From assembly GCF_028641065.1 (NCBI RefSeq), contig NC_073398.1, forward strand, positions 23,746,001 through 23,810,000: 64,000 bases of DNA, given 5' to 3'. A program made the position numbers and the translations under genes. A model generated the notes under the pieces. It was given only the letters and a program-made list of their open reading frames with translations. It was not told the origin of the DNA and did no database searches. Positions 9,443 through 36,556 of this stretch are shown here, piece after piece. Each line of letters starts with the position of its first letter. Position 1 is the stretch's first letter. Source of the stretch: Leucoraja erinacea (lineage: Eukaryota).

Positions 9443-9448
9443 GGAGAT

Positions 9449-16923: not shown

Positions 16924-17127
16924 ATGGCTTGTGGCGTTTTAGTGTATGTTCTACTTTGTTTCAGTCTCCTGCTTTTAACCATTAAGTCGGCAGAAATATT
17001 TATCCAGGTTCCAGTTTCTGATAGGGAGGCAAACCTGGCTGTAGATTATGCTGTGAATGCTTACAACAGAAAGTCTGCCAATCCTTACCTCTTCAAGCAG
17101 CAGCAACTAAAAAGTGCGAAGTATAAG
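16924..17127 (+). CDS. Triple-cystatin (kininogen/fetuin superfamily) gene exon 1: signal peptide and domain 1a
   Basis: AGCATGG Kozak; MACGVLVYVLLCFSLLLLTIKSA hydrophobic leader; DREANLAVDYAVNAYNRKSANPYLFK cystatin helix; AAG|GTGGGT donor, phase 0, 204 nt. Confidence 0.88.
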
Positions 17128-20058
17128 GTGGGTAATAATTATTTATGTAACTATGCTTCCACATGTACTTAACAATGAATCTGGATAACTAACCATTACT
17201 CATAGAATTAATGATTACCATAAAACATATTTTTGAATTACATAAACAATAATTTAACATGGAGTACATAATTAGAATAGATTATTGTGTTGGGCATAGC
17301 CAAATCTAAATTATTTATTTTGTTATTTATATATTGTATCCAGATTATATATTTACTGCATTAAATTAGCATCAATTTGAAGTAGAAAAAAACGACGAAT
17401 GTCTGGAAATTTTTCTTAGATTCAGTTCACTGGATTGGATTGAAATTATAGATATGAGACACATCCTATATGGTTTACAAAGTTCACAAATCAGCCTAAC
17501 TAAAAATAAAACAGCTAGTTTCCAACAATAAGTAACTGTAATATGACAGGTAACTGAATATATCTGATTTTATGTGAGTTTTATTGTAATATGAATATGA
17601 ATTACCTGTCATTTTTAAGTTACATTTAACTTCAGAACACATGAAAAGTGGATTAGAAGCAGGCCACGAGGCCCCTCAAGCCCGCCCCTCCATTCAAATG
17701 ACAGGCTGATCCATGTCGGCTTCAACTATTGTGCCATTTCCCCAAAACCCTCAATTCCTCAATCTTTGAAATATTTATTTATCTCAACCTTAACTATATT
17801 AAATGATCTGGCCTCCACCAGACGTAGAATCGGAGATCTCCAAAAATTTACGACTAAGCAAAGAGATATATGTGTACTTAACTTTCAAAACCAAGTCCCT
17901 ATATGGGACGTGCTATAGCATTGATGCGTTGTAATAATGGTATAAATATACAATGACAACTGATGTTGTCATGGACAGCATTTATGAGATTGTAAAACTT
18001 AATTTTTGAGAAATTGCAATAGACTTTTTCATACACAGATTCGATTTGAATTAGATTTTCCTACTGAAGAATAAAATTGTGATAACATTGTTCCTTAGAC
18101 AAATAACATCCCTCATTTTGCTAGAACCATGTCTACTTAGTAATTTTACAGCACCAGTTACCCAGTGCCTTGGATTAATAATCTAGAGATCTGAGATTCA
18201 AATCACATGGTGGCATCTTGAAAAGATGAATTCATTCTATACAGAAAAACTACAATAATAACCATGAAACCGTTGAAAGTTGCAATATCCTCATAGTGAT
18301 TTGATTTAGGCATGTACATGGTTTGCATTCTGAAATGATGTGGTAAACAAATAAATTGTATCAAAAGCCTGGGATACTAGGGATTCAATTATACTTTATT
18401 GTCATTGCAATAAATGCCAATCTTGGCAACATACCGATAATGAAAAGAAACAGGCAGTTGCAAAATGTGCTTTCTTCCTTGTGGAGAATTGGAGCAATGT
18501 TAAACTGTACATGCAAATTTCATAGGATTGCCATGATTATTCCAACTGAGATCAATTGTTAGTGTAGTTTTTGGATCATTTGACCACTCCATTTCCCTGG
18601 CATAGCAACCCAATGGGTTAATGGACTGAACTAATAGGTGAGCCACCAGGAACAAAATGTTGGGTTAGCTGCACTACTCTTTGCATTAAAAAAAGTCATG
18701 TGTTTCTGCTGACACAATGGCTCTTCCGTCATTTTTATTATTTTACCCACAAATTCAAATACACTCAAACTGGAAGGCAGAACGAGAACAATTCATTCTA
18801 CAGCAGTGCAATGGAAGGTGTTTATAATATATGGGTTTATAGTTGTATCTTACGCTGAAGGATGCAGTACTATACAGAACATGGTCAGGAATGTGACATT
18901 GTGAGAAATATAAGAAAGGCAAGCCTCATGTTTTTTTTATCAACAGACATTAATGGTAGAATAAAGATGTCCAGTTAATAATTTTGGGGGGGCTCAGAAC
19001 CTAATCCTGCAGATCAAGGTGAATGTTTCCTCCTATGAGGTTACGAGATCGGATGGGCTTAGCATGTCAGAGGCATGGGTAGGAAATCAAACATAGCTTC
19101 AATGTTTCTTTGTAGGTTAAAAAAACTGTCAAGCCTTTCCTGGCCTATAAATCATGGAGTCGTAGAATCATAAAGCTACATGGCACTGAACCTGGCCCTT
19201 TGGTTCAACTTGTCCATGCCGACCTAGTTGTCTAACTGAACTATTCCCGTCTGGCCCATATCCCTGCAAACCTCTCCTATCTTGTACCTGTCCAATTGTC
19301 TTTTAAATGTTAAAATTGCACCCACCTCTACCACTTCCTCTGGCAACTTGTTACAATAGACAAAAAACAATAGTGTACTGTATACGCACCATCCTCTATG
19401 TGAGAAGGCATCATCAGAAATTATAAATCTTTTCTTACCATCTCTCTTTTGGCCCTCACGAACCGTACATCAGCTAAAACCTCATGAGGAAATCCCAAAC
19501 AAATATGTAATCAGAACCAAATTTGTATTTTGAATGAAAAAGCTTTCTTTACTTGCTAATGGCATATTGGGTTGAGATTAAAGTAACTTCAATACGTTGA
19601 AACTTCCATGCTCACCTTGTTCCAGTAACTGCAGAAGGGCAGGGGATTAAGGAAAAGGGAAGGGAGTTAATTCAGGCAGACCTTATTTTTTCCTTAGCAA
19701 CAGGAAAGCTCCATGCAGTGGACAAGATAGTGGCAAGGATTGCAAATCAGATTGCCTACTGAACTTTCTCTTTCAGCTGAAATGTTACAATATGAAAAAA
19801 GAGTTCAAAGAAAATTAAAACATGGGATAAAGAAAGAGAATAACTGAAGTAAAATGAGACCCAAATTTATGCTTCATGAAAATGTTTCACTTCAATGGAA
19901 ATTCAGTTTTCTATACTTAATGCTCTTGCTTGGGCAAGTTCAAGCCATGATAAACATTGCATTGTACATTTTGGTTTTGTATGGAGAACTGGTTTTATTG
20001 GTAAACAGTTGTACATGCCAGTGCAAAAGTACGATGTCTGCTGCACTGTAAGAATAAA

Positions 20059-20291
20059 GTCAAAGAAAGCTTAAAGTCTTTAATATCTTCTTCACCCTTT
20101 AGTAACGGTAGAAAATTAATGAATCTGACTAATTGATGTCAAAGAAAGCATAACGTCTTTATTATCTACATCCTTTAATAATAGTGGAAAATATGAAAGC
20201 ATTAATGAATCCGTATAATTGATTTTACAGAAAGTTTGAAGTCTAATATCTTCACCCTTCACTATGGTGTAAAATACATGTATTAATGAAA
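20059..20291 (+). repeat. Imperfect ~80-bp tandem triplication just upstream of cystatin exon 2
   Basis: Unit AGAAAGc..AAGTCTttAaTATCT..caccctt...AAAAT..ATTAATGAA recurs at ~20059, ~20138 and ~20225. Confidence 0.6.
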
Positions 20292-20384
20292 GGAGAAGTT
20301 ATGTTTACTTTACAGGCTTCACATAGTTTAATATAAGTGACGGAGAGAGAACAATATTTTCCTGTGTTGTACGCATCTTAACAG

Positions 20385-20495
20385 ATCACTTCTCCAGGGG
20401 TGAAAGCATACACTGTGATATTTGATATTAAGGAAAGTGTTTGTCAAGAACAAGTGGAACTGAGAACATGCCGTTTTAAATCTGACGGTGATGCT
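20385..20495 (+). CDS. Triple-cystatin gene exon 2 (domain 1b)
   Basis: CAG|ITSPGVKAYTVIFDIKESVCQEQVELRTCRFKSDGDA|GTAAGT; 111 nt, phase 0-0; F.I.E..C...C.FK cystatin pattern. Confidence 0.88.
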
Positions 20496-20739
20496 GTAAG
20501 TATCTTTACATTCATTATGCCTGCTGATAAAGCACGTTTAAAGAAATAATGCTTTGCATATAAAATTTATTATCCAATATAAACATATTAAACAAGTTCC
20601 TCATGCAGCTAGAACAACATTTGTGAATGGTATTGTTTGAGATTTGTGTTTTTAAATTTATTTTCCCGGTTGCTAAACATTTGGACTCCCCTTCCAATTC
20701 CCATACTGTCATTTCTGTCCTTTGGCATCCTCCACTGTC

Positions 20740-21207
20740 AAGGAGCTGTCCATTGAGAGTTTGAAAAATGTCATGTTGAAGACCTCTTTCGACTATGTAG
20801 AAGACCTCCTTCGACTATGTTGAAGACTAGCTACGACTAAATTCGGGAAAATTGGGCACCGAATAGTGGAGACTGAAGACGACCTCCCTCGACCTCCCTT
20901 TGACTATGTTGAAGACTCTCTACGACTACCTTCGACTGCCCTCGATTACCTACGACTAACATGCCAACCTACTACGACACACTATGACTAAATCTACGAG
21001 TATAAAAAGTGTTAATTTGTTCCTTGGCGACCTTTTTTTTCTTGCGGGCATTTTTCAACATGTTGAAAAATAAGCCGCAACCTAGCTGAGGCCTCGAGTA
21101 CACGGGGCCTACTCTCAAGCATGAAGGAGAGTTACAAAGACCTCCTACGACCCTGTGTCGACTATGCTGCGAGTATGAGTCGAGGACAAACTCGCCAGAA
21201 CTCGCGC
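20740..21207. mobile_element. CpG-rich non-autonomous DNA-transposon-like element with short internal repeats
   Basis: Many CTTCGACTA/CTACGACTA units, small palindrome TTTTTCAACATGTTGAAAAA, no coding capacity. Confidence 0.5.
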
Positions 21208-21254
21208 CCCTCTCCCTCCACCTTTTTTCTTTCACCAGCATGCCCAGCCTGGAT

Positions 21255-22660
21255 GCATACCCATTTACATAGAAAAATAGAAAATAGGTGCAGGAGTAGG
21301 TCACGGCCCTTCGAGCCAGCACCGCCATTCAATATGATCATGGCTGATCAACCATAATCAGTACCCCGTTCCTGCTTTCTCCCCACATCCCTTGATGCCA
21401 TTAGTCCTAAGAGCTACAGTATATCTCACTCTTGAAAACATCCAGTAAATTGGCCTCCACTGCCTTCTATGGCATTGAATTCCACAGATTCACAACTCTC
21501 TGGGTGAAAAGGTTGAAGGGGAACATTTTTCCGATCCCGATCCCTTAAGAATTTTGTATGTTTCTATAAGATTCCTTCTCATCCTTCGAAATTCCAGTGA
21601 ATATAATCTCAGTCGATCCATTCTGTCAACAAAATAGAGAGAGTACAGAGGAGATTTACTAGAATGTTGCCTGGGTTTCAGCAACTAAGTTACAGAGAAA
21701 GGTTGAACAAGTTAGGGCTTTATTCTTTGGAGCGCAGAAGGTTAAGGGGGGACTTGATAGAGGTCTTTAAAAGAGTGATAGACAGAGTTGACGTGGATAA
21801 GCTTTTCCCACTGAGAGTAGGGAAGATTCAAACAAGGGGACATGACTTGAGAATGAAGAGACAGAAGTTTAGGGGTAACATGAGGGGGAACTTCTTTACT
21901 CAGAGAGTGGTGGCTGTGTGGAATGAGCTTCCAGTGAAGATGATGGAGGCAGGTTTGTTTTTATCATTTAAAAATAAATTGGATAGTTATATGGACGGGA
22001 AAGGAATGGAGGGTTATGGTGTGAGCGCAGGTATATGGGACTAGGGGAGAATACGTGTTCAGCATGGACTAGAAGGGTCGAGATGGCCTGTTTCCGTGCT
22101 GTAATTGGTATATGGTTATAAAAGGTTTTTTTCTCATCTCAGTCCTAAATGGCCTACCCTTTATTCTTACACTGGTTCTGGACTACCCCAAGATCGGGAA
22201 CATTTTTCCTGCACCTAACCTGTCCAATCCCTTAAGAATTTTATATGTTTCTATAAGATTCCTTCTCATCCTTCGAAATTCCAGTGAATATAAGCTCAGT
22301 CAATCCATTCTTTCATCATATGTCTGTCCCGCCATCCCAGGAATTAACCTGGTGAACCTACGCTGCACTCCCTCAATAGCAAGAATGTCCTTGCTCAAAT
22401 TAGGAGACAAAAACTGCACACAATACTCCAGGTGTGGCCTAACCAGGGTCCTCTACAACTGCAGTAGGACCTCCTTGTTCCTTATCTCAAATCCTCTCGC
22501 TATGAAGGCTAACATGCCATTTGCTTTCTTCATTTACTTCACTTCACTTTGTACTGCATTTGCCCACTCACCCAACCTATCCAAGTCACTCTGCAGCCTC
22601 ATAGCATCCGCCTCGCAGCTCACCCTGTCATCCAGCTTTGTTTCATCCACAAAGTTGGAG
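21255..22660. mobile_element. Nested CR1-type LINE 3' fragments (minus-strand copy interrupted by plus-strand copy 21635-22120)
   Basis: LSYRERLNKLGLYSLERRRLRGDLIEVFK...TRGH...FFTQRVV..WN.L on plus; antisense equivalents at 21255-21630 and 22125-22660. Confidence 0.85.
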
Positions 22661-23456
22661 GTGTTACATAATTTCTCCCTTCCCCCCCACCCCCCGATCC
22701 CTTCTGCCTATATTCCTTTCTTTGGCTTCAAAATTTGTGCTTTGTCCTTATCTCCTACTTTTTGTCTTTTGCTCTGTGGCCTTTGTCCAATTACCTGCCA
22801 ATGAACCCCCCATCCCTATCCACCTTTCACTTGCCAGACTTTGTCCTGCAACCAACTCTCTTCCAGCTTTCTCCACACCTCTACAACAATCACTCTGAAG
22901 AAGGGTCCTTGATCAAAACACCTATCTGTATTCCCCAGAGATGTAACCCAACATGCTCAGTTACTCCAGCACTTTGTATCTTTGTTTATGACAAAACATT
23001 CCTGCCTTACAATAAATAATTTATTGAAACATAGAAACATAGGTGCAGGAGTAGGCCATTTGGCCCTTCGAGCCTGCACCGCCATTCAATATTTGTCCAA
23101 AATGGACAATTTGGTTTGGGTTTGGAGTAAATGTGGATAGTTTGTCAACCCGTCCTCACTTGGATCCATATAACACTAGCTCTTGCCCCACCGCTTCTCC
23201 TCACTTCTTTCTACTCCATCAGTCTGAAGAGGTGTCCCAACCCAAAAGGTCAATTGGCCATTTCCTTTCACTGACATTGCCTGGTCTATTGAATGTCTCC
23301 AGCTGTTTTTTTGCATTTGTCTACCCTTACAGATGCGTACATACAAACGCACCCGATCAATTTGGATTATGCATTTTAAATGTAATAATTTGAAAGCAAT
23401 ACAATAGGGAAAAGATGAAACTGAATCATATTGGATGTGTGTTTCATTTGCCCCAG

Positions 23457-23559
23457 GTTGAGGGTGTGTGCAAAGCAGAAATCTTTTTTCAATTTGGGTT
23501 CCACATTAAAGTGCCCAAGACACCTATGTGTGATCTACGAATGCCCATCAAAAAAGTGG
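23457..23559 (+). CDS. Triple-cystatin gene exon 3 (domain 1c)
   Basis: CCCCAG|VEGVCKAEIFFQFGFHIKVPKTPMCDLRMPIKKV+G|GTGAGT; 103 nt, phase 0-1. Confidence 0.87.
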
Positions 23560-24545
23560 GTGAGTAACGGCGTTGTGTATATTACATGTTAAAAATAGAT
23601 CTGCTTTGGTAATACCATCAATTACTATACTGGGAAAAGTTCAGAATTCTTTGGCATTTACTGGAATGAAATTCTACAACTGACAGTATTCCATTTTGCC
23701 ATCTTACCATCCTGTGCATGCTTAGTCAATGAATATACACATGGCTGAAAGTAATAGATTTTTTGACACCAAGAGAACCAAGGAAGATTGTGGTTGGGAG
23801 GGAAGCAGAAGAAGATACAGGATTGGTTATGAGGTTATTGAATGGCAGCACCAGCTCAAGGAGCTTCTATTTGGTATGTTTCTTGTGTTCTGCTGTCCCT
23901 CTCTTCTAATGGAAATATTTATAAGGGGATATTGATGTATTTTCCAAATGTCTTTCATCTGCATAGAAACATCAGATTTATCTGGTGTTGGCCAGGTGAA
24001 CCAATGAATAATCAGCCAACTAATGGAATATGGCTTCAACAGTACTATCTCCAATGTACCACTCACCTATGCCCAGTTTAGATTTTACCACAAATACTGG
24101 ACTTTAGGAAATCAGAAGAAGAAAAAAATTATGGTGGGGATGATGGGCGATGATTACAGATGGCTCAGTTACTTGAACAGAGCTCCTTCAATTGAAACCG
24201 TCCACACAAACATGCAAAGATATGAAGATCCAGACATTCTTCAGGCATGGGATGATAAGTGGCAATTGCATTTTCTTTGTAAAAGTGCAAGGCAACATTC
24301 AAAAGCCATTCTAATCATCAAGTCCTCTATCATGACCATCCTGGGATTGCCATTGACCAGAAGCTTAATTAGAAACAGACATAAAGAGGTCAGAAGGAAA
24401 GTGCCTTGCAGTGAGTAAGCCATCTTCTGAGGCGCCATAGTCTTTTAACTTCCATTATTCGTTGAAGCTTTATTTCCAGATCTCTTTGAAACTATTCTTC
24501 AACTTGCCTTTGCTCATTAATCATTTTTCTCTTTTATTTTGCTAG

Positions 24546-24706
24546 TGGAGACCATTGCTATTCCTTGTGAAGATTGTCCAGTTTCTGCAAGCCTTGACAA
24601 TCCCATGGTGAAAGCATCAGTGGAATTGGCATTGGAAATCTTCAATTATGAAAATAAAAAGAAAAGGACATTTGCGCTTAACAAGATTTTATATGCAATA
24701 AAAGAG
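24546..24706 (+). CDS. Triple-cystatin gene exon 4 (domain 2a)
   Basis: TAG|(V)ETIAIPCEDCPVSASLDNPMVKASVELALEIFNYENKKKRTFALNKILYAIKE|GT; 161 nt, phase 1-0; CxxCP linker as in fetuin/kininogen. Confidence 0.9.
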
Positions 24707-25188
24707 GTACTGGATAATCCAACATTACGTAATCAACACAATAATATCTTTAGAGGATTGTGAAGTTTGCGGCTCAGAGAGATAGAGAAAGAATAAAGGC
24801 ACATGTGGTTATGAAAATTAAGATGATCATTTTAAAATAGTGTAGACAGTGTAGTTTAAGCACAGGATGATGGTTGCAAATAACTTGTTCAGTTAGGTAA
24901 TGGGCTGCAAAGTTTCAATTAATATTTGCGTATTGTCTAGCAAAGCATTAGAATAACTGAGTCTACAAGTTAAAAAAAAGACAGTGAAACAACCAGACAT
25001 ATTTATGTCACTTCTCTTTCTGTGGCTGCAAGGCAAAGATGATGTAACCTCACCTATTTTGAGTTCAATGACTGGAAAATCACCAGTTACGCAAGGGTGA
25101 CCTGTTCAAATCCACTTACCTTTCATTTCACCAGGGATGAAAAGAACTAGAGATTATCACAAAGAACTAGTATTGTTTTCTTCGTCAG

Positions 25189-25299
25189 GTGGTGATGGGA
25201 GAGATATACTGGGTGCACTTCCGAATTCGGGAAACAGAATGTGGAGAAAACAAAAAAAAGCACTGGTCAGACTGTCCACTTAAAGCAATCGATGAAGCA
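25189..25299 (+). CDS. Triple-cystatin gene exon 5 (domain 2b)
   Basis: CAG|VVMGEIYWVHFRIRETECGENKKKHWSDCPLKAIDEA|GTAAGT; 111 nt, phase 0-0; E|VVMG occupies the QVVAG position. Confidence 0.9.
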
Positions 25300-26022
25300 G
25301 TAAGTTCATGCGTAATTAACGTCCAATTTTTATTCAAGATAAAAGGAAAATCATATTAGAAACAATTGTCATTTGGTGATTTAAAAAAAGAGCACAATGT
25401 AAACAGAAGTATCTGAATGTTGAATGATTCTTCAAATAACATTATAAGCAACAGAGAATTAAGAACATACACTTCTACCTATCACAGCATGCAGGCCAAA
25501 GAAAAAAAAACATGGACTATGCAGTTGATCACTGAAGAATCATTGTGTGAATTCTAGATTCTTTAACTCTCATTTGAACTCCATCTTTATTAATTTTCAC
25601 ATCTTTTGTTGATCCAAAACTCCATCCTATCTTCATCTCAGCTAATAACAAGATTGAAGGGTTTCGGCCCGAAACGTTACCTATTTCCTTCGCTCCATAG
25701 ATGCTGCTGCACCCGCTGAGTTTCTCCAGCTTTTCTGTGTAACCTTCATCTCAGCTAATCTGTTTGATATCCATAATTTGCAGAGTCTCCTTCGACCACA
25801 GATCAGTCTCCAGGCAAGTAGTCTCCATTGCAGTAATAACAACAAGAATCTGTGCAAAGGATTTGCTAACCTTTAGAAAAAACTTTCACACTAGATTTCT
25901 ACTGTGCCCTATATGCATTTGCTTTACAAGAAGGTGCCTGAATTGTTATTGAGTTGTTTATGCACAGAATCATGATACCATCAGGCTGAATTGTAATTTC
26001 TATGCCTTTTGTAAAAATCAAG

Positions 26023-26128
26023 ATAATCGGAGATTGCCGTGCAGAAGTTTTGTTTCCAATTGGTGATACAACAGGTCAGATAAGAGGAATTCCCAAATGC
26101 CAGCTGATCCAACTGATTATGGATGAAG
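26023..26128 (+). CDS. Triple-cystatin gene exon 6 (domain 2c)
   Basis: AAG|IIGDCRAEVLFPIGDTTGQIRGIPKCQLIQLIMDE+G|GTAATG; 106 nt, phase 0-1; paralogous to exon 3 (G.C.AE..F..G...P.C.L). Acceptor is a weak AAG. Confidence 0.83.
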
Positions 26129-26393
26129 GTAATGTTCAACGGTGAAGAAATTCTTTTGTTTAAAACTTTGAAAATGTATACATGGTGAATGAATAGAAAA
26201 TAGAAAGGTCATCCATCATTTCTCCCTCCTCCCTCACAGTCTTTCAGAAACACATGTATCTAAAAATAGAACAGCATAACCATAATCCCTCAGAAATATT
26301 TTATTTGCATAGTCATAGGGATTAAGAGAAAACATATGTAAAATGTAAGTCACATTGCCTCTGATTGGCTTACATATTGAAATCTAACCTGTA

Positions 26394-27194: not shown

Positions 27195-28072
27195 CATTGA
27201 ACTCCATCATCAAGTTCGCCGACGACACCACTGTTGTAGGATGTATCACTGATGGGGACGAGTCAGAGTATAGAAGTGAGATCGACCGATTGACCAAATG
27301 GTGCCACCACAATAACCTGGCTCTCAACACCAGCAAAACCAAGGAACTGATGGAAGGGGTAGGATAGGGACCCACAATCCCGTTTATATCAACGGGTCGA
27401 TGGTGGAAAGGGTCAAGAACTTCAAATTCCTGGGCGTGCATATTTCCAAAGATCTCTCCTGGTCCCAGCACACTGATGCAATTATAAAGAAAGCACATCA
27501 GCGCCTCTACTTCCTGAGAAGATTACGGAGAGTCGGTATGTCAAGGAGGACTCCCTCGAACTTCTACAGGCACACAGTAGAGAGCATGCTGACCGGTTGC
27601 AATGTGGCTTGGTTCGGCAACTTGAGCGTCCAGGAGCGGAAAAGGCTGCAAAAAGTTGTAAACACTGCCCAGGCCATCAACGGCTCTGACCTCCCCACCA
27701 TCGAGGGGATCTAACGCTGTCGCTGCCTCAAAAAGGCTGCCAACATCATCAAGGACCCACACAATCTTGGCCACACACCATTAGGTAGCAGGTACAGGAG
27801 CCTGAAATCTGCAACATACAGGTTGAGGAACAGCTTCTTCCCCACAGCCCTCAGCCTATTAAACACAACTTCAAACAAACTCTGAACTATAACAGCCTTT
27901 TGCACTTTATCAGTTTATTTATGTGTAGATAATATTATGTCTATATACTTATGGTATATAGACACACTGATCTGTTTTGTATTTATGCCTACAATATTCT
28001 GTTGTGCTGCAGCAAGCAAGAATTTCATTGTCCTATCTGGGACACATGACAATAAACTCTGACTTGACTTGT
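27195..28072 (+). mobile_element. Rex1/Babar LINE 3' fragment
   Basis: IIKFADDTTVVG, FKFLGVHIS.DLSW, KAHQRLYFLRRL; 3' end ACAATAAACTCTGACTTGACTTG; stops and indels present. Confidence 0.88.
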
Positions 28073-28830
28073 TTAACAGCAGTAGTTAACCTACAGTTGA
28101 ACCCTGTCCATGCATGTTGGAGTGTTTACTACACGCACTTAAGCAGGTGGTAAATCAGGTTATCAGTCTGAACCCAATCACCCTTTGTATCTTTTCATAA
28201 TCAGTGTTCTTTGCCCATAAGCTTATTCAAAGCTTTGCCTTGACCATGTATTAATTTATTGAAAGTACACTCAAATAAGAATTGGCCTACGGAAATCCTA
28301 TTTCCCAATGTATATAATTCATTTATTATTTGATACAGCATAAGTTTGAAACCTGTAGGCAATATGGTGAAAGATTTTGTAAATCACAGTATGTAAACAT
28401 ACTCCCAAGTCCCTCCGCACCTCCATTTCTGAATCCGCTCCCCATTTAGAAAATAGTCTATGGCTTTTTTCCTACTGTCAAAATGCATGTCTGCACACGT
28501 TGCTACCTGCATTCCACCTGCCACTTTTTTGCCCATTTTCCCAAACAGTCCAAGTCCTTCTGCAGTTCTTGCTTTCTCTACACTACCTTCCCTCCACCTA
28601 TCTTTGTATCATTCACAAACCTGACCACAATGCCTTCAATTCCCTCAACCAAATCATTGATCACCAACATGAAGAGTAGCGGCCCCAGCACTGACTGCTG
28701 TGGACCACCACGAGTTACTGGCAGCCAACCAGAAAAAACCCTTATTACTCCAACTCTTTGCCTTCTGCCATTCAGCCAAGAGTAGTTCGGAGAAATAAAC
28801 TTACATTTATTCTTGTGTAGGAGAATTTTG

Positions 28831-28861
<31 letters not shown>

Positions 28862-29218
28862 CTTGGCCTCTCTACTGAAACATGCAACAGATGAAGTCTG
28901 CCAGAGTATTTTACTATACAAGAGGGTAGAGCCAACAATAAAGCTGAAGACATAAATAACTTTAAACATGGCACAGATGCTGTGCCTGATCTGGGATAAT
29001 GTGATCCCTTCAAACTTCTGGTGTGTAGATTAAATCTGTGGTTTCACCTCACAAGAGTGTAAATAAAGCATATATTACATTAAAATTCCATTTCTGCAGG
29101 GATTCATTATTATAACCCATATACAATTTCCCAAGGGTGCTCAGTTTAAGCAAGTACGGAACTCACACTTTTTGGAGAAAATTGTATTGTCATTCCCTAA
29201 TAAATGTTTGTTTTCTAG

Positions 29219-29376
29219 ATGTTAGTTCGGTGCCATGTATTGATTGCTTACGACCTCTGAAGGTTACTGACCCAAGAGTGCACAAGGTTGTGGAGCATTC
29301 CATTTCTAAATTCAATGACAACAGCGGGCAGCTTTACAAATTTGTTTTGGCTCGAGTTCTCTGGGCAGTACATGAG
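29219..29376 (+). CDS. Triple-cystatin gene exon 7 (domain 3a)
   Basis: TTTTCTAG|(D)VSSVPCIDCLRPLKVTDPRVHKVVEHSISKFNDNSGQLYKFVLARVLWAVHE|GTAAAA; 158 nt, phase 1-0. Confidence 0.9.
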
Positions 29377-29809
29377 GTAAAACATGGTTGTGTGCTTGAC
29401 ATTCACTTTATCACCGGCTTAGTTGCAAATAATTGAACCCAGAAGAGATAGCATAAGTAAACTTTTAAAAAGTGGTGCAACTTATCTCAAGGTCAATAAA
29501 TTACATTTGTAATGTTGAAACACAACTCTATTCTATATTTTATGGTGTTTAAATGGCAGACGGCACAGTAATGCAGCAGTTGGCATTGCTGCGACACAGC
29601 CCCAGCAAGCCAATTTTGATCCTGGCCTCGAGTGCTCAGTTCAGAGTTTGCGCATTCTCCCATGACTGTTCACGTTGCTCTTGGGTCCCCTGGTTTATTC
29701 TACTTTTCAAAGATGCATTAGTAAGTTATTTGGCCTCTATAAATTACCCTTTGGCAGAATTAGTGACAGAAAGAAGAACAGGATAGTTGATGGGCATACA
29801 AAAGAGATA

Positions 29810-30648
29810 ATGCAGTATAATGTAGATAAATGTGAGGTTATTCACTTTGGCAGCAAGAACAAAGAGGCAGATTATTATGTCAATGGTGTCAGATTAGGAA
29901 AAAAGGAAGTGCATCGAGATCTGGGTGTCCTTGCACACCAGTCACTGAAAGTAAACATGTAGGTACAGCAGGCAGGGAAGAAAGCCATCATAATGAAAGC
30001 ATCACATTGGCCTTCATAACGAGAGGATTTGAGTATAGGAGAAAATAGGTTCTTCTGCAGTTGTACAGGGCCCTGGTGAGCCCACATCTGGAGTATTAGG
30101 TGCAGTTTTGGTCTCCTAATTTGAAGAAGGACATCCTTGCTATTGAGGCAGTGCACCGTAGGTTCACGAGGTTAATCCCCAGGATGTTGGGACTGTCATA
30201 TGAAGAAAGATTGCAAAGATTGGGCTTGTTTTCACTGGAATTTAGAAGGACGAGAGGGGACCTTATAGAAATGTATAAAAGGACTGGACAAGCTAGATTC
30301 AGGAATAATGTTCCCAATGTTGGGGGAGTCCAGAACCAGGGGCCACAGTCTAAGAAAAAAGGGGAGGCCATTTAAAACTGAGATGAGAAAAAACCTTTTC
30401 ACCCAGTTGTGAATTTGTGGAAATCTCTGCCACAGAAGGCAATGGAGGCAAATTCACTGGATGAATTTAAAAGAGAGTTAGATAGAACTCTAGGGGCTAG
30501 CGGAATCAAGGAATATGGGGAGAAGGCAGGCACGGGTTACTGATTGTGGATGATCAGCCATGATCACAATGAATGGCGGTGCTGGCTCGAAGGGCCAAAT
30601 GGCCTCCTCCTGGCCCTATTTTTTTATGTTTCTATGTCTATGTTTCTA
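29810..30648 (+). mobile_element. CR1-type LINE 3' fragment
   Basis: MQYNVDKCEVIHFG, QFWSP, LSYEERL..LGLFSLEFRR; tail TTTCTATGTCTATGTTTCTA. Confidence 0.85.
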
Positions 30649-33203
30649 AGTCGCAGGGATAAATGTTAAACATTGCATTTGTCTTCCTTATAACCGATTC
30701 AACTTGCAAATTAACCTTTTGGGAATCCTGCCCTTCTGTTGGTTTTTAAATGTTTCCCAATCCACTAGCCTCCCACTAACCTTTGCAATATTATATGCCC
30801 TCTCTTTTAGTTTTATACTGTCTTTGACTTCCCTTGTTAGCCACGGTTGACTCATTCTCCCCTTAGAATATGTCTTTCTTTTTGGGATGAAAAGATCCTG
30901 CATCTTCCAAATTACTCCCAGAAACTCCTGCCATTGCTGCTCCACCATCATTCCTACCAGGGTCCATTTCAATAGGATGTATAACCATGGATATTCCATT
31001 CCCAGCTCAGATCCTCGTTCAGCCATGTCTCTGTGATGTCCACTACGTTGTACCTGCCATTTACTAACTGCACTAGAAGCTCATCCACGTTGTTCCGCAT
31101 GCTGCATACATTCAAATATAACATTTTAATTCAATACTCAGCATCGCTCTTCTCATATTAATCCCCAATTTGTCTGACCTTAGACTCTTATCCCTTCTTA
31201 AACTTTCTGTCCTATTTCTTCTGGAGACTTTAGTAACCTGCACTTTAACTTCATCCTTACAATTCCTTACTTATTGATTGTAAATATTACTTGCTAATTG
31301 TTATAATTAATACATCATTATTTTTTCTTATGGAAGATTGTAACTATTAAAAAGATAAATTCAGTTGAAGTTTTGAGTCACCTTATGTCTATTTTTTCAT
31401 TTGTAATACTTCAATATATTTTAACTAAATGTATTATGATTTTATTGTGAATTACAAGAATCCCTCATTATAAGGTACTATAGGAGGTGGAATGGCTCTC
31501 ACACAGCCCACTGTTTCCACCTCTTCCATTCTTCTTCCTGCCCCCCCCCCCCCCAACCCCACATCAGTCTGAAGAAAGGTCTTGACCCGAAATGTCGCTT
31601 ATTTCCTTCGCTCCATCGATACTGCTTCACCCGCCGAGTTTCTCCAGTATTTTTGTCTACCTTCGATTTTCCAGCATCTCCAGTTCCTTCTTCAACCATA
31701 AATGTTAACGTGTTTTCTCCTTCCAAAGACACTAACCTGCTGAGCATACAAATTTCATTTTAACAAAAATGTATTTTTGTTACTGCTGGCTACAAATACT
31801 AAAGATTGTTTGTTAGGTTGTTTAATAGAGTTAATTGTGATAGAAGCAATTGCTTGTCAATATCAATGGCCTCCACAGTGTAACTGGCAACCTATGTTCT
31901 TAAAGAGGCGGGTGTCTAATTACTGTGGGGATGCTCCATCTGCTATAACCGAAATTTGTTATAAAGAGGTCCGCAATTACAAGGGTTTACTTATTTTTAA
32001 ACAATTTTAAAATAAATTATGATTTATTTAATAGTTTCTATCAAAGTTATTTAAGAACAATGAAACGTATATTTCATCAAGGCAAAGGTAGAAACCCCAT
32101 CATGGAGTCCAGAAATGGGGACTGTGTTCTGTTGCCTGCTCAGCAGACTGGGCGATTTCACCTGGTGTAAAGGCTCTGTAGTAGAGGCCCCCAGGCCCAT
32201 GGACCTGACGAATTAGTGCCACCATAGCAATTACATGGGGGGGTTGGAAATGGGAGACAGTTGTCAAGTTAAGCATGATCTGGCCAAAATTTTGCTAATG
32301 TGTCATGATACACTAATAAGTTTCATCTTGCTTCTAAAGAACCTAAAATGTTATAATAGTTAAATTGGCAAATATGCATTACAAATCATCGTTTTACTCT
32401 AGAAAGTTAAGTTAATATAAGAAAACACTTGCCAAGGAAAAGTTAATAGTTATTGAAAATTTTAAATATTGCAACTGCTGCAAATCTGGAATAAAAATAG
32501 AAAATGTATGAACAGTCAGCAGGCAACGGATGATACTGACATACTGTTTTCAGAGTTAATGATTTAACCTGAAATGTTGACTGTTTCAGTTTCCACAGAT
32601 GCTGCCTTATCTGCAGAGTGTTTTCAACATTTCTGTTTTGGAATAGATTCTTTAGATGCACCTAAATAAATGCATATTATGTACATGCACATTCTTTTAT
32701 CACATGCATTTGCCTTTCATCTCTGGCCTTTCATCTCGTGCCTTTATCCAACCATCTTCCAATCAAAAAGTCCCCCTTGTTTGCCAGACTTTGTCCCGCC
32801 TCCTCTCTTTCAACTTTCTTTCCCCTTACTACAATCAGTCTGAAGAAGAGACCTGTTCTGCAGAGATGTCGTCTGACCCATTGATTTACTCCAGCACTTT
32901 GTATCTTAAAAGCTATAACCTATCCTGTAAGCTTGATTCACAAATTGCAACCTTCAAGTAGGGCATTAAATAAATACAATTAAACATTAAGTGTTTAAGA
33001 AGGAACTGCAGATGCTGGAAAATCGAAGGTACACAAAAATGCTGGAGAAACTCAGCGGGTGCAGCAGCATCTATGGAGCGAAGGAAATAGGCAACGTTTC
33101 AATTAAACATTAACATCTTTAACAATATGATGTGGCTTGCAGGTGATAATACAGCTCTACGATATTTCTAACATTTTTCTCTCCTGTACTTTAATGTTTA
33201 CAG

Positions 33204-33314
33204 AACTCCATCGGGGAGAACATTACTCTGAATTTCGAGCTTATTGAAACAACCTGTCCTAACAATAATGAGACTGTACCAGACATGTGTGGTCCAAAGA
33301 TCCCTGCAACAGCA
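33204..33314 (+). CDS. Triple-cystatin gene exon 8 (domain 3b)
   Basis: TTTACAG|NSIGENITLNFELIETTCPNNNETVPDMCGPKIPATA|GTAAGT; 111 nt, phase 0-0. Confidence 0.88.
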
Positions 33315-33464
33315 GTAAGTTGATGGCGTTGAAGCTTTATTACTTATTACTGCATTTTATATCAGAAAATGTAGATCACTACTTTGATGAAAGCTTGTTT
33401 ACATCCAATAATAAGTCTCTTCGAGACTTTACCAGATTTGATCTGACATATTTATTCTGCATAG

Positions 33465-33578
33465 GGTTCTGCTGTCTGTTTCACCGTGCAGACCTATGGC
33501 ATCTTTGGAAAACTAGTCTACCACAAGTTAACGTGCAACATGACGATAGATTGGAAACTCTATATACTCAATTACACG
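33465..33578 (+). CDS. Triple-cystatin gene exon 9 (domain 3c)
   Basis: ATAG|GSAVCFTVQTYGIFGKLVYHKLTCNMTIDWKLYILNYT|GTAAGA; 114 nt, phase 0-0; two Cys at the expected spacing. Confidence 0.82.
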
Positions 33579-33864
33579 GTAAGAGGTGATTAATTAAACT
33601 TTCTGTATATTTAGTTTGAGATTTTCATCTAGTTTAAGATGACGAGAATCTTACAAATCTAGACAATTTACTATTTGATCCCAGTCTGTTTATGCAAGTA
33701 AAAATCAACAGCGTATCTATCAGTTGGAGTGCTTTAACAGTACATTATAATCCCTGATTAGAGGAAAATATTGGCAATCTCTGTTTATCATTATTTAATA
33801 ATCCTTCTTAATGTATGTTTTGTGAATCACCTTCTCGTTCTCCTGGTTTTTCTTACCTTCTCAG

Positions 33865-35252
33865 ATTTTCCTCAGGGTTGAAAAAGAAAGGTAACAAAAT
33901 GGGCAACAGAGGATTCTTTCCTCAAGTCTTCAGGATCGATGTTTGCTAATGTCAGGAGCCAGTTGATGTATAAATGCTTGGGTGTTATAACACATGGCTG
34001 TGATGTTGCACATCCAGTATTTTGCTGCCATTCCAAGTCTATGACTTCTGAGGTGGTTGATGAAGCCAGTATGCAAATGATAGATTGTATAACGGAGAAG
34101 GGTTGGGGTGGGGAGTGCTTGATGGAGGGGGTGATCTGCCATTTACGCTGGGCTTCTGCCTGCATCCACTGATGGGGAAAGAAGTCCTCAGAACAATCCA
34201 GAATTCTCCATTTTGAGCAGTCATTAGTAAGGGATTTCTTTCAAGGATGCTTTGGGAACATCCTTGAAATTATTTCCTCTGTCCTCTGTTAATTTCTTGC
34301 CATAACAGAGCTTCATAGAGAGTGCCTTTTTTGACTGATTGCAAGGTCAACTTAGCATTTTGTCTACCCGTAGTAAATTTTTAACCTTGCTTATCACCTA
34401 TCAATCTACCTCTACCTTAAAAATATTCAAAGATAATGCTTCTACCGCCCTTTAAGGAAGAGAGTTTTAAAGATTTATGAGCCAATGTGGGGAAAACATT
34501 GCTCAATCTCTGTTTTAAGTGAGTAATCTATGATCAAAGGCTATAGTCCAGATGAATATCATTAGGTTAAACAAAGTTTAGTAAATCCTGTGAAACCTCC
34601 ATCAATAGCTTTTGATGAGATAATGGACATCATTAAGACCAGCCAGAAAAGATACCCTAATCACAAACACTTGCACTTTTTACACTTTTCTATAGAATTA
34701 TATGCATCGCTAAAATATGCAGCCAGAAAGAACCAGGTATGGCTGTGCTCTGATCCTAACGTAATACAGTTTTGCAATCATAATTGCCAATCGTAATACA
34801 TCTTCTGTGGGGTGGGAATGCCATGATGAAGGGTTTGCTTTATGCTCTGGCATTTTTGCCAAAGTGATGTGGCAGAAATTTGGGAGGAACAATTTGCATT
34901 GTTTTAAAATGACTGAAGTTTTATGGCTTTGGTCGAGGCTATTATTGCAGGGTAATACACATGTTCATATCTGCTGCGACCCAATTTATTTATTTATTTA
35001 ATCTCCTCTAATTGACAACTGACTGCAGTAAAATTGTAGCACTGTTTTACTGTCCAAAGTACAAATTATCTGGCAGATTTTGTGTACACCTATATTTGTA
35101 TGGAAGTCATAGTCGTTTCTTACTGGTCTGTTTCACTCATTTTTTAGCTCTTTAATTCACTTTCATAAATCATGTTGACTTTGCCCAATTATTATTTTTT
35201 CCCTGTAGCCTCCTATTACTTCCTCATTAAAGCTTCTCACATTTTCCCTATG
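33865..35252 (+). CDS. Three candidate mini-exons (33865-33890, 34696-34736, 35209-35252) of the triple-cystatin gene
   Basis: Each has a pyrimidine tract+AG and a GTA donor. 26+41+44=111 nt keeps frame: IFLRVEKERIICIAKICSQKEPASYYFLIKASHIFPM. No homology support. Confidence 0.4.
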
Positions 35253-36183
35253 GTATGTTAATTGGCCTTAGTTTTCTGAATTTCTGATAATGTACAATGA
35301 AGTAAAATTACTTTTTGGAAAACACATATTGAAAGGGGAAAAATAGATCAAGATTTTAATATTTTCTATGTAAATCTTGTAAAATATATTTAGCAAAGCC
35401 AATAAATAAAATTAGTATGACCCCTATGTTAATTTAATTTCTTAATTTCTCATCCAAAACTAATGGGTATCCTATATCTTGGCAAGAAAATCCTCTTACT
35501 ATTTGTAAAAATGTCACTGATATTAGGGATTTTCTTCTGAGCATAATGAATTTTGCAGGGGGAGATGACAAACTGTTCAGCAAATGATGCTAACAGATCA
35601 TATTTACATCCGTATATCTGTTATTTTTCCATTAAAGACACATTTGCATAACGTTTCATTGTATTTATGTGCTGCAAGTGTTGCGTCTATTTTTAAAATC
35701 AAGGCCAGTCCTTCACAGAAATAGCAGAAGATTTATTTAAAGTATAAAGTTTGATTACAAATAGCAGTTTATGCCAGTTTCCTCTGACCTGGAAGTGAAA
35801 ATTTACGAACATGTTCTAATTTTCACACTTTCCTCATTAACATGAATCAATCTTCAGTTCAGATCTTCTATTTTACCAATTAGAGGTCTGGATTTAAAAA
35901 GCAGCTCTATTTACATACAGCTGCAGTGGAACAATGCTTCATGCATTTGATAATATGCACCTGTCATAAGCACATAAGCAATGCCACTTATAATCCAGTA
36001 ATTAGAGAAATAAACTAGCATTATCAAATAACTCAGTTAATGCCTCTCTTTCGTATGGATCATTTCTTGATAACAATGTACAGTCAGTAAAGCAACAGAG
36101 AAATAAGCTTTGAAGATGTGATTACTAATTACACCGATAGTTACTTCCCATATACTCATAGCTACTTCCCATCATGTCTCTAG

Positions 36184-36387
36184 GAAGTCTTCTGGAATGA
36201 AGCTGATTACTTGAAGGAGCTGCAGCCTGAGGAGTCCACAGTGTCTGAATTTACAATCAAAACTTCTGTTGAACCAACTCCGCTTCCTGCTGGACCTCAA
36301 AGCTCAGAAGTACCCGTGATCATGCTGGAAGAATCTAGGCCCACAGTGGCAGGTGAAATCACTGGTTCTGAACTAGTAGATGAGTAA
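36184..36387 (+). CDS. Triple-cystatin gene probable last coding exon (acidic S/T/P-rich tail)
   Basis: CTCTAG|EVFWNEADYLKELQPEESTVSEFTIKTSVEPTPLPAGPQSSEVPVIMLEESRPTVAGEITGSELVDE*; phase 0 fits exon 9; locally raised GC; followed by poly(A) signals. Confidence 0.7.
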   Translation, partial: EVFWNEADYLKELQPEESTVSEFTIKTSVEPTPLPAGPQSSEVPVIMLEESRPTVAGEITGSELVDE

Positions 36388-36527
36388 GAACAGAAGGCAT
36401 GGAAAGAAGATTGAAAGATTTTGTCTAATTTTCAAACAAATCTTTTGGTTAGTTTGGTTACACTCACAGATCAATGAAATAACTTGCTCCAAGTGCCATG
36501 GCGATCCTTCTTTTTCTGAAAATGTAC

Positions 36528-36556
36528 AATAAAATAATATGGAAATACACAATAAA
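36528..36556 (+). terminator. Tandem AATAAA polyadenylation signals of the triple-cystatin gene
   Basis: AATAAA at 36528 and 36551, 140-165 nt after the stop, with GT-rich sequence downstream. Confidence 0.6.

What the first reader, a model, noticed from the sequence alone, without database searches (positions are those of the whole stretch)
16924..36556. Intact secreted triple-cystatin gene with kininogen-type exon layout, sitting between RELN and SLC26A5
Seen: nine exons splice by GT-AG into one 393-aa frame (phases 0,0,1,0,0,1,0,0,0; middle exons all 111 nt). This gives a signal peptide and three cystatin folds with 4+6+6 cysteines and CxxC linkers (CEDCP, CIDCL), then a 67-aa acidic tail (about 460 aa total). 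Known: three exons per domain over three domains is the KNG1 layout; mammalian KNG1 lies in the AHSG-FETUB-HRG-KNG1 cluster, and RELN and SLC26A5 are direct neighbours in human. As I recall, fish kininogens are described with two cystatin domains. Inference: this is either a relocated, highly diverged kininogen paralogue or an independent triplication specific to cartilaginous fish, and may be an undescribed plasma or secretory protein family. The ORF track shows only exons 1, 4 and 7.
Basis: partly seen in the sequence, partly recalled or inferred. Interest (0 to 1): 0.85.

Follow-up and report, generated by a model that had tools for sequence, protein, structure and literature searches.

The report
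Kinin-less kininogen-like gene of skate
This is a real, expressed skate gene for a secreted protein with three cystatin domains; public annotation already calls it "kininogen-1-like", yet it lacks the bradykinin segment that defines a kininogen and seems to be an old sister lineage of true kininogen.

Summary
Ten GT-AG exons on the + strand (16924-36387) give 393 codons in nine exons plus a 67-aa acidic tail. cDNA-type contigs from three studies carry four junctions, and loose ends show two more.

The gene is not undescribed as a sequence. All ten exon translations lie exactly and in order in RefSeq XP_055509150.1, "kininogen-1-like [Leucoraja erinacea]". Relatives were found in 13 elasmobranchs, a chimaera and the West African lungfish, so it is not specific to cartilaginous fish.

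The 16 cysteines of kininogen domains D1-D3 are kept. Absent are the kinin (0 of 26 family proteins; none in the window), the QVVAG glutamine, the PW hairpin, the linking cysteine and the D6 motif. Domain trees reject one-to-one orthology of D2 and D3 with tetrapod kininogen (AU p 0.005, 0.03).

Best reading: a secreted, probably non-inhibitory type-3 cystatin glycoprotein and an ancient kinin-less paralogue of KNG1. RELN lies tail to tail beside it. SLC26A5 is not visible in this window. The joined protein was never searched; an orthologue stood in.

The parts
16883..16889 (+). TATA-like TTTATAA about 35 nt upstream of the ATG (possible core promoter)
   Evidence: Read directly. Not tested further. 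The X4 contig has about 134 nt more 5' sequence than the CDS, so the true start is open.
16924..17127 (+). Exon 1: ATG, signal peptide, helix part of cystatin domain 1 (68 codons, ends in phase 0)
   Evidence: Pfam Cystatin 19.5 bits, profile positions 4-42. Exact at residues 1-68 of P0047.
20385..20495 (+). Exon 2 (111 nt): first hairpin of D1; ITSPG stands where QVVAG would be; 2 Cys
   Evidence: The end of this exon appears as the loose end before 23457 in the X1 contig. Exact in P0047 at 69-105.
23457..23559 (+). Exon 3 (103 nt, ends in phase 1): second hairpin of D1; 2 Cys; no PW
   Evidence: Joint 23558/24545 GT..AG in X1, X3 and X4.
24546..24706 (+). Exon 4 (161 nt): CEDCP linker and helix of D2
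   Evidence: Joints on both sides seen. Weak positional match to the start of fetuin-B CY2, E about 2.
25189..25299 (+). Exon 5 (111 nt): D2 hairpin with (E)VVMG in place of QVVAG; 2 Cys
   Evidence: Pfam Cystatin 20.4 bits, profile 45-76. Joints. The tool prints the first GTG codon as M; P0047 and P0030 show V.
26023..26128 (+). Exon 6 (106 nt, ends in phase 1): second hairpin of D2; 2 Cys
   Evidence: Joints 25299/26023 and 26126/29217.
29219..29376 (+). Exon 7 (158 nt): CIDCL linker and helix of D3
   Evidence: Pfam Cystatin 21.2 bits, profile 2-39. This exon was the query of the exhaustive protein search.
33204..33314 (+). Exon 8 (111 nt): D3 hairpin with (E)NSIG; 2 Cys; NIT and NET sequons
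   Evidence: The start of this exon is the loose end behind 29376 in the X1 contig.
33465..33578 (+). Exon 9 (114 nt): second hairpin of D3; 2 Cys; NMT and NYT sequons
   Evidence: Exact in P0047 at 356-393. Not seen in laid reads. The equivalent exon is skipped in the predicted white-shark isoform P0002.
36184..36387 (+). Exon 10, coding part: 67-aa acidic, Ser/Thr/Pro-rich tail ending ...EITGSELVDE, then TAA
   Evidence: D+E 15, K+R 3, pI 4.05. Modelled as disordered in the orthologue, pLDDT about 30.
36388..36670 (+). 3' UTR with AATAAA at 36528-36533, 36551-36556 and 36638-36643; the end near 36670 is inferred
   Evidence: The X1 contig has 712 nt after exon 7, which equals 111+114+204+283 (arithmetic).
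39224..39484 (-). Context: ORF over the last coding exon of RELN (basic C-terminal region), tail to tail with the cystatin gene
   Evidence: The ORF is. Its likeness to the reelin C-terminus is recalled, not tested. Pfam gave only a weak unrelated hit.
42256..53174 (-). Context: RELN exons (reelin subrepeat B, EGF)
   Evidence: Pfam PF21471 at E 3.8e-11, 1.4e-06, 2.1e-13 and 6.7e-08 for the ORFs at 42256, 46463, 52818 and 44659.

Best explanation
The locus is the little-skate gene that RefSeq names "kininogen-1-like". It is a ten-exon, transcribed gene for a 460-aa secreted glycoprotein.

The protein has a signal peptide and three type-3 (kininogen-type) cystatin domains with 2+3+3 inferred disulfides. 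A disordered, acidic, probably O-glycosylated tail follows.

It has the heavy-chain build of kininogen but cannot act as one, because there is no kinin segment to release. It also lacks the cysteine that ties the heavy chain to the light chain, and the D6 motif.

Its three papain-binding wedges are degenerate: the Gln of QxVxG is Ile in D1 and Glu in D2 and D3, and no PW hairpin is present. I therefore infer that it works as a circulating or secreted binding protein in the manner of fetuins and HRG. At most D2 keeps weak or altered protease inhibition. It is not a kinin precursor.

In evolutionary terms I read it as an ancient kinin-less paralogue of KNG1, kept in cartilaginous fishes and lungfish. 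Its three-domain layout did not arise by the same duplications as that of tetrapod KNG1.

Shown: the gene, its splicing, its identity with the RefSeq model, its distribution, and the missing motifs. Inferred: secretion, disulfides, loss of inhibition, a binding role, and paralogy.
For: Gene and splicing:
- Exon model and frame.
- Spliced contigs in 3 studies with 4 of 4 laid junctions, plus 2 more from loose ends.
- 10 of 10 exon translations lie exact and contiguous in P0047 = XP_055509150.1.

Fold:
- Pfam Cystatin in 3 stretches, 101.8 bits, in the 97%-like orthologue P0030.
- AF2 of P0030 gives three helix-plus-sheet cystatin folds (mean pLDDT 72.5) and a disordered tail.
- Foldseek best matches are fetuin-B (E 1.8e-11), then single cystatins.

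Relatives:
- Exon 7 against 1.84 billion representatives gave 14 hits: 3 family clusters (sharks/rays, chimaera, lungfish), 8 true kininogens, 3 spurious repeat proteins, and 0 fetuin-only or HRG-only proteins.
- phmmer bits of P0030 are 76-106 against three-domain tetrapod KNG and 55.5 against fetuin-B.
- The 16 domain cysteines are invariant or nearly so across the family and KNG, and the domains are collinear.

Missing kininogen features:
- Kinin pattern: 0 of 26 family proteins, against 15 of 23 tetrapod KNG proteins (3 further KNGs show variant kinins). None in six frames of the window.
- D6 motif CPG.PW: 0 of 26. The linking Cys is replaced, and Gln is replaced by Glu in D2 and D3 of every member.

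Paralogy:
- Tetrapod KNG D2+D3 form a clade at 100/99 support. AU tests reject an all-D2 clade (p 0.0047) and an all-D3 clade (p 0.030).
- A clade of the family's own D2+D3 is not rejected (p 0.216).
- Teleost and coelacanth KNG have two cystatin domains plus the kinin, and lamprey KNG has one (PMC3835742, passages).
- HK is listed as present in the West African lungfish (table reprinted in PMC10499198, passage). That lungfish also has the kinin-less member P0007.
Against: - I could not fetch any kinin-bearing kininogen from a cartilaginous fish or a lungfish. Co-existence of the two genes in one genome therefore rests on literature tables, not on my own data.
- The tree holds only tetrapod KNGs. 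There is no teleost, coelacanth or lamprey KNG and no fetuin.
- Its one outgroup is an HRG N1 piece cut from a chimeric database model, on a very long branch (3.74). All deep nodes are open.
- The AU groups were written down after the first tree had been seen.
- Gene conversion between D2 and D3 in tetrapods would give the same picture.
- The family's C-terminal tip resembles that of HMW kininogen, which ties it closely to KNG1.
- Kordis and Turk 2009 score "kininogen" as present in Chondrichthyes (PMC2784779, Table 2). They may mean this very gene.
- Loss of inhibition is inferred from motifs only; D2 keeps V-V-x-G.
- Tissue and protein-level expression are unknown. The one raw RNA run had no reads on the exons.
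Confidence: 0.6

Rival explanations
1. It is the one-to-one orthologue of KNG1 in cartilaginous fishes (and one of the lungfish copies). It moved next to RELN, and its kinin segment was lost or changed beyond recognition.
For: - The nearest non-family hits are kininogens.
- All 16 domain cysteines and the domain spacing are shared.
- The C-terminal tip is of the HK type.
- NCBI names it kininogen-1-like in 11 of 15 listed proteins.
- Kininogen is scored as present in Chondrichthyes (PMC2784779).
- A review speaks of cartilaginous-fish kininogens as LK-like (PMC8706920).
- An all-D1 clade is not rejected (p 0.235).
Against: - No kinin in 26 of 26 members.
- D2 and D3 are not one-to-one with KNG D2 and D3.
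- Teleost and coelacanth KNG have only two cystatin domains. An orthologue with three old, mutually 11-29% identical domains would need a loss and a re-gain.
- The lungfish is reported to have HK besides P0007.
- As I recall, a bradykinin-like peptide was isolated from little-skate plasma. Only the paper's title was seen here, in a reference list. My recalled motif for it is absent from the window and from P0047.
Confidence: 0.27
2. It works as a fetuin-B-type inhibitor of astacin or meprin metallopeptidases. The Asp of the CEDCP linker would plug the catalytic zinc, as the CPDCP trunk of fetuin-B does (mechanism recalled).
For: - The best solved-structure matches by sequence and by fold are fetuin-B in complex with astacin or meprin.
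- Exons 4 and 7 align to the fetuin-B C-P-D-C-P stretch.
- The atlas ranks fetuin-A at 0.91 and fetuin-B at 0.90 beside kininogen-type at 0.90.
Against: - The exon-level matches are not significant (E 0.1-2).
- The Asp is not a family feature. Most sharks, the chimaera and the lungfish have CxGC or CEHC, as kininogens have CxGC. Asp occurs in skates, sawfish and Heptranchias only.
- No kininogen heavy chain turned up among solved structures in these searches, so fetuin-B wins by default (the review seen in the listing says crystallisation failed).
Confidence: 0.08
3. It is not a working gene: a chance open frame, a pseudogene or an annotation artefact.
For: - The X1 contig lacks one A in the A8 run of exon 5.
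- The raw RNA run X14 shows no exon reads.
- About 6 of 9 codon differences in the related skate run X4 change the residue.
Against: - Spliced contigs occur in three studies at depths of 3.4-49.
- X3 and X4 have the full A8 run.
- The frame and all 16 cysteines are kept from skates to lungfish.
Confidence: 0.02

Closest known systems
Kininogen (KNG1), heavy chain D1-D3 and the C-terminal tip of the HMW form
   Same: - Three tandem cystatin domains, collinear within about 10 residues: 27-133, 150-259 and 275-382 here against 20-125, 141-247 and 261-368 in KNG.
- All 16 domain cysteines and the CxxC start of D2 and D3.
- Three exons per domain plus one tail exon (the KNG1 layout is recalled).
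- A C-terminal [FI]-[TS]-D-x-D-L-L-like tip, as in amphibian HK.
   Different: - No kinin, no His-rich D5, no CPGxPW D6 motif and no N-terminal linking Cys.
- QVVAG is changed: Gln to Ile or Glu.
- No PW hairpin in D3.
- D2 and D3 are not one-to-one with tetrapod D2 and D3.
- The neighbour is RELN.
Fetuin-B (and fetuin-A, HRG): non-kinin type-3 cystatin plasma proteins
   Same: - Secreted multi-cystatin glycoprotein with degenerate papain sites and a disordered C-terminal region.
- Best solved-structure match.
- The skate linker CEDCP resembles the CPDCP trunk.
   Different: - Three domains, not two.
- The linker Asp is not conserved in the family.
- Lower sequence score than to kininogens: 55.5 against 76-106 bits.
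- No fetuin appeared in the exhaustive exon search.
Type-2 cystatins (cystatin C, E/M, F)
   Same: The single-domain fold; Foldseek TM up to 0.81 on the target.
   Different: The inhibitory Gly / QxVxG / PW wedge is not kept in any of the three domains.

Membership tests
Kininogen (KNG1) | Tandem kininogen-type cystatin domains with the conserved disulfide cysteines | tested here: met
   Three domains were found by a profile in 9 of 9 full-length family proteins examined; a tenth family protein, the partial P0018, showed two. The 16 Cys are invariant or at least 90% conserved with 8 tetrapod KNGs.
Kininogen (KNG1) | Kinin (bradykinin-like) segment directly after the last cystatin domain | tested here: not met
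   Pattern PG[FWL]SP[FL]: 0 of 26 family proteins, against 15 of 23 tetrapod KNGs. There are no hits in six frames of the window. The aligned region carries no kinin.
Kininogen (KNG1) | QVVAG cysteine-protease-binding loops in D2 and D3, and PW in D3 | tested here: not met
   D2 has E-V-V-[MI]-G and D3 has E-x-S-x-G in all aligned members. There is no PW.
Kininogen (KNG1) | N-terminal Cys bonded to the light chain, and the D6 motif CPGxPW (HMW form) | tested here: not met
   IDCND of KNG aligns with VPVSD here. CPG.PW occurs in 0 of 26 family proteins.
Kininogen (KNG1) | One-to-one orthology of the domains with KNG1 D1, D2 and D3 | tested here: not met
   AU tests: all-D2 clade p 0.0047, all-D3 clade p 0.030, all-D1 clade p 0.235. 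The tree has tetrapod KNGs only and its deep nodes are open.
Kininogen (KNG1) | Position in the AHSG-FETUB-HRG-KNG1 cluster | tested here: not met
   In this window the 3' neighbour is RELN. No cystatin-type gene was noticed elsewhere among the ORFs listed for the window; the flanks were not scanned for cystatin domains. The cluster itself is recalled. Fused HRG-KNG1 database models P0008 and P0009 fit adjacency in mammals.
Kininogen (KNG1) | Nine exons for the signal peptide plus D1-D3, three per domain, then a tail exon | tested here: inconclusive
   The layout is shown here. The KNG1 layout and its phases are recalled, not compared.
Fetuin-B | Two cystatin domains joined by a CPDCP trunk whose Asp blocks the metallopeptidase zinc (recalled) | tested here: not met
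   There are three domains. CEDCP and CIDCL occur in skates only, while the family consensus is CxGC.
Inhibitory type-2 cystatins | Gly / QxVxG / PW tripartite wedge | tested here: not met
   Activity itself cannot be tested with these tools.
Cystatin superfamily (Pfam PF00031) | Match above the curated cut-off | tested here: met
   Orthologue P0030: 101.8 bits against a cut-off of 22.2, in 3 stretches. Single exons of the window stay just below it: 19.5, 20.4 and 21.2 bits.

The most novel reading that the evidence does not exclude
Jawed vertebrates began with two kininogen-type genes. One is the kinin-bearing KNG1 (one to two cystatin domains in lamprey, teleosts and coelacanth). The other is this RELN-adjacent, kinin-less, three-domain gene, which survives only in cartilaginous fishes and lungfish and is mislabelled "kininogen-1-like". 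Its three domains arose independently of the tetrapod D2/D3 duplication. Yet it shares with HMW kininogen the C-terminal D-x-D-L-L tip. If so, an HK-type terminal exon would be older than the lobe-finned fishes, where HK is said to begin.
Probability: 0.4. Interest if true: 0.55.

Novelty: new variant of a known kind. Interest (0 to 1): 0.42.

Why it matters
Work on the evolution of the kallikrein-kinin and contact systems treats kininogen as present in all vertebrates. [quoted passage not shown]

Here that structure is laid out for the gene that databases call kininogen in skates and sharks. It has nine cystatin exons plus one tail exon, three domains and no kinin. If this is a separate lineage, surveys that count it as KNG1 overstate what cartilaginous fishes have. 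The source of the skate kinin would then still be unknown.

It would also add a new non-inhibitory type-3 cystatin plasma protein beside the fetuins and HRG.

The sequence itself is already in RefSeq, so the gain is in interpretation, not discovery.

Tried and rejected
- Per-exon Pfam search: only sub-threshold cystatin hits, but the profile positions fit the exon order.
- Per-exon PDB searches: nothing significant. The top hits were chance matches to retron proteins.
- NCBIfam: no family for any of the 4 proteins, as expected for a prokaryote-centred library.
- Search for a kinin-bearing kininogen in fishes with an axolotl KNG query: 17 hits, all tetrapod. This is uninformative because of the word index.
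- Lungfish query: only itself and two shark members.
- Ponczek et al. 2020 (PMC7757006) is not held. I saw only its table as reprinted in PMC10499198.
- The supplements of PMC8706920 and PMC3835742 would say which cartilaginous-fish and lungfish sequences were used. I did not ask for them, because the brief says supplements are closed.
- Literature searches for a description of this gene found none. [quoted passage not shown] I could not tie it to this family; the S. torazame member here is A0A401PH50.
- Searches of the scan's own notes for SLC26A5/RELN/cystatin, kininogen and fetuin met no finding.
- SLC26A5 was not found in the window.
- Recent internal triplication is rejected: the paralogous exons are only 11-29% identical.
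- Pseudogene is rejected (see rivals).

Full report
THE OBSERVATION

The window carries, on the + strand, ten exons with canonical AG|..|GT borders: 16924-17127, 20385-20495, 23457-23559, 24546-24706, 25189-25299, 26023-26128, 29219-29376, 33204-33314, 33465-33578 and 36184-36387. Exons 1-9 add up to 1179 nt, which is 393 codons. The phases are 0,0,1,0,0,1,0,0,0, and the three middle exons are 111 nt each. The last exon adds 67 residues and TAA, for 460 aa in all.

Each of exons 1-9 holds two cysteines. The two in exon 1 lie in the signal peptide, so the domains carry 4+6+6. CEDCP opens domain 2 and CIDCL opens domain 3. The tail is acidic (D+E 15, K+R 3, pI 4.05).

I checked the frame by exon lengths and per-exon translations only.

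IS IT TRANSCRIBED AND SPLICED AS PREDICTED?

The look-up of sequencing runs listed five small runs holding 5-8% of the sampled words of 16900-26200. That is about the exonic share. I laid X1, X3, X4 and the raw RNA run X14 on 23420-29400.
- X1 has a 1652-nt contig (depth 33) and X4 a 1536-nt contig (depth 49). Both carry exons 3-4-5-6-7 without introns.
- The four joints (23558/24545, 24704/25187, 25299/26023, 26126/29217) are GT..AG. They are also present in X3 fragments.
- Loose ends of the X1 contig read on into the end of exon 2 and the start of exon 8.
- So 6 of 9 junctions are seen, including both inter-domain junctions, in three studies.
- X14 had no read on any exon (about 5% of the run read; tissue unknown).
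- Junctions 1-2, 8-9 and 9-10 rest on the database models below.
- The "RNA?" label of X1-X5 is the tool's guess, but intron-less contigs in three studies are hard to explain otherwise.

WHAT IT IS

Single exons give only sub-threshold matches to Pfam Cystatin. The profile positions are the right ones: exon 1 at 4-42, exon 5 at 45-76, exon 7 at 2-39.

Exon 7 was searched exhaustively against 1.84 billion representatives and gave 14 hits:
- three family clusters: "kininogen-1 isoform X2" of Carcharodon, "kininogen-1-like" of Callorhinchus milii, and "kininogen-2-like" of Protopterus annectens;
- eight true kininogens of amphibians and mammals;
- three spurious repeat proteins;
- no fetuin-only or HRG-only protein.

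A search with the shark protein found 15 proteins of ten chondrichthyan species. Eleven are named kininogen-1(-like), one T-kininogen 2-like, and three hypothetical or uncharacterized.

The 90% cluster of the Amblyraja protein holds XP_055509150.1, "kininogen-1-like [Leucoraja erinacea]", 460 aa. All ten exon translations of the window lie in it exactly and in order. The only gaps are single residues at 140 and 266, where the two split codons fall.

The gene is therefore already in RefSeq with the same exon model, and the window is little skate or something identical at protein level.

FOLD

For full-length work I used the 97%-like natural orthologue P0030 (Amblyraja radiata).
- Pfam finds three cystatin stretches (101.8 bits).
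- AlphaFold2 with an 18-row alignment gives three helix-plus-sheet cystatin folds (mean pLDDT 72.5, pTM 0.48) and a disordered tail from residue 402.
- Foldseek puts fetuin-B complexes first (E 1.8e-11) and single cystatins after them.
- By sequence, fetuin-B is also the best solved relative (55.5 bits).
- No kininogen heavy chain turned up among solved structures in these searches, so this says little about family.
- phmmer scores against three-domain tetrapod kininogens are higher (76-106 bits).
- The protein atlas cannot separate fetuin-A (0.91), fetuin-B (0.90) and kininogen-type (0.90).

LIKE KININOGEN, AND NOT

An alignment of ten family members with eight tetrapod kininogens shows the following.
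- The 16 cysteines of D1-D3 are invariant or nearly so.
- The domains are collinear within about ten residues.
- The kininogen N-terminal cysteine (IDCND) is replaced (VPVSD).
- QVVAG is KITSPG in D1, E-V-V-[MI]-G in D2 and E-x-S-x-G in D3 throughout the family.
- There is no PW hairpin.

A kinin pattern is found in 15 of 23 tetrapod kininogen proteins fetched. Three of the misses show variant kinins. It is found in 0 of 26 family proteins and nowhere in six frames of the window. The D6 motif CPG.PW is likewise 0 of 26.

The Asp in the linkers (CEDCP, CIDCL) recalls the CPDCP trunk of fetuin-B. It is confined to skates, sawfish and Heptranchias. The family consensus is CxGC, as in kininogens.

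ORTHOLOGUE OR PARALOGUE?

The three domains are old: paralogous exons are 11-29% identical.

I built a tree of 54 domains: 29 of the family, 24 of eight tetrapod KNGs, and one HRG N1 outgroup cut from a chimeric model.
- Tetrapod KNG D2 and D3 form one clade (100/99).
- The family's D3 is a clade of its own (100/99), and its D2 likewise (74/88).
- All deeper nodes are open.

AU tests:

| Constraint | p |
|---|---|
| all D2 as one clade | 0.0047 (rejected) |
| all D3 as one clade | 0.030 (rejected) |
| all D1 as one clade | 0.235 (not rejected) |
| the family's own D2+D3 | 0.216 (not rejected) |
| all D2+D3 | 0.173 (not rejected) |
| all family domains | 0.388 (not rejected) |

Caveats: the groups were named after the first tree; only tetrapod KNGs were available; the outgroup branch is very long; and gene conversion could mimic the result.

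The literature fits an independent origin.
- Teleost and coelacanth KNG have two cystatin domains (D1, D3) plus the kinin, and lamprey KNG has one (PMC3835742, passages).
- HK is tabulated as absent in whale shark and present in coelacanth and West African lungfish (table after Ponczek 2020, reprinted in PMC10499198).
- That lungfish also has the kinin-less P0007, which is 43-45% identical to shark members.
- I could not fetch the lungfish HK or any chondrichthyan kinin-bearing gene (one search returned tetrapods only; one search was closed), so co-existence is not shown by my own data.
- Kordis and Turk score kininogen as present in Chondrichthyes (PMC2784779, Table 2). A review calls cartilaginous-fish kininogens LK-like (PMC8706920). 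Either may refer to this gene.
- As I recall, a bradykinin-like peptide was isolated from little-skate plasma (Dasiewicz, Conlon and Anderson 2011). I saw only the title, in a reference list. My recalled motif for it is absent here.

NEIGHBOURHOOD

RELN exons lie on the minus strand from 42256 to beyond 53174. An ORF ending at 39224 looks like the reelin C-terminus (recalled). The two genes are thus tail to tail, about 2.5 kb apart.

SLC26A5 was not found in the 16.9 kb upstream, which is mostly repeats, nor anywhere else in the window.

HOW IT MOST LIKELY WORKS

It is a secreted, N-glycosylated protein (four sequons, all in D3) of three disulfide-locked cystatin domains with an acidic, Ser/Thr/Pro-rich disordered tail. 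It cannot yield a kinin. Its papain-binding wedges are degenerate.

It is therefore best seen as a binding or carrier protein of the fetuin/HRG kind, with at most residual or altered inhibition by D2. This is inference from motifs. No tissue, ligand or activity is known.

VERDICT

- It is partly wrong: the gene is neither restricted to cartilaginous fish nor unannotated.
- Interest is moderate.

Noticed in passing
window 36340-36384; proteins P0015, P0018, P0007 versus P0035-P0040: The family's very C-terminus (skate ...EITGSELVDE, white shark ...EITESDLLDE, chimaera isoform ...EFTDSDLLIK, lungfish ...GLSDLDLLDLL) resembles that of HMW kininogens (caecilian ...TFSDADLLP, newt ...ELSDDDLLSLFS, birds and mammals ...FDLxDAL). 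It may be a shared terminal-exon motif, older than the reported origin of HK in lobe-finned fishes, or it may be convergence.
   Followed up: partly
window 24560-24575 and 29236-29250: The linkers CEDCP and CIDCL carry an Asp where most family members and kininogens have Gly (CxGC). The Asp is seen in skates, in sawfish and Heptranchias (D2 linker), and in D3 of skates only. It mimics the fetuin-B CPDCP stretch.
   Followed up: partly
window 25245-25252 (exon 5): The X1 contig lacks one A of the A8 run, which would shift the frame. X3, X4, the window and the RefSeq protein have the full run. It is probably an assembly or sequencing slip, or possibly a rare allele.
   Followed up: no
P0002, P0023, P0031 (white shark, zebra shark): Predicted isoforms skip in-phase exons. 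The white-shark isoform X2 lacks the exon-9 equivalent. The zebra-shark isoforms lack the exon-2 equivalent or a block from D1 to D2. The 111/114-nt in-phase exons allow cassette skipping; it is not known whether this is real.
   Followed up: no
window 25620-25819 and 26400-28200 (introns 5 and 6): Repeats with very high depth in all four runs (up to 110,000 summed word depth at 25620-25819), with strand-switch joints. Reverse-transcriptase-like ORFs lie at 27316-27711 and, in intron 2, at 21607-22041. These are SINE/LINE-type elements.
   Followed up: no
window exons 3-7, run X4 (organism B): Ten listed base differences in the related skate run X4 fall in 9 codons. About 6 of them change the residue and 3 are silent, which is fast protein evolution for so close a relative. 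One further silent change (23495) belongs to run X3.
   Followed up: partly
P0008, P0009: Two mammalian database models fuse HRG-like N-terminal domains to kininogen. They are read-through models of adjacent genes. I used one as the source of the HRG outgroup.
   Followed up: no
window 6000-10000: A GC-rich stretch (0.50-0.51 against about 0.40 elsewhere) holds duplicated ORFs on both strands (8061-8633, 8398-8973, 8904-9230). It could be a repeat cluster or a CpG island of the unseen upstream gene.
   Followed up: no
window 25189 (tool behaviour): The translation tools print a leading GTG codon as M, so exon 5 appears as MVMG. The real residue is V (VVMG), as in P0047 and P0030.
   Followed up: yes
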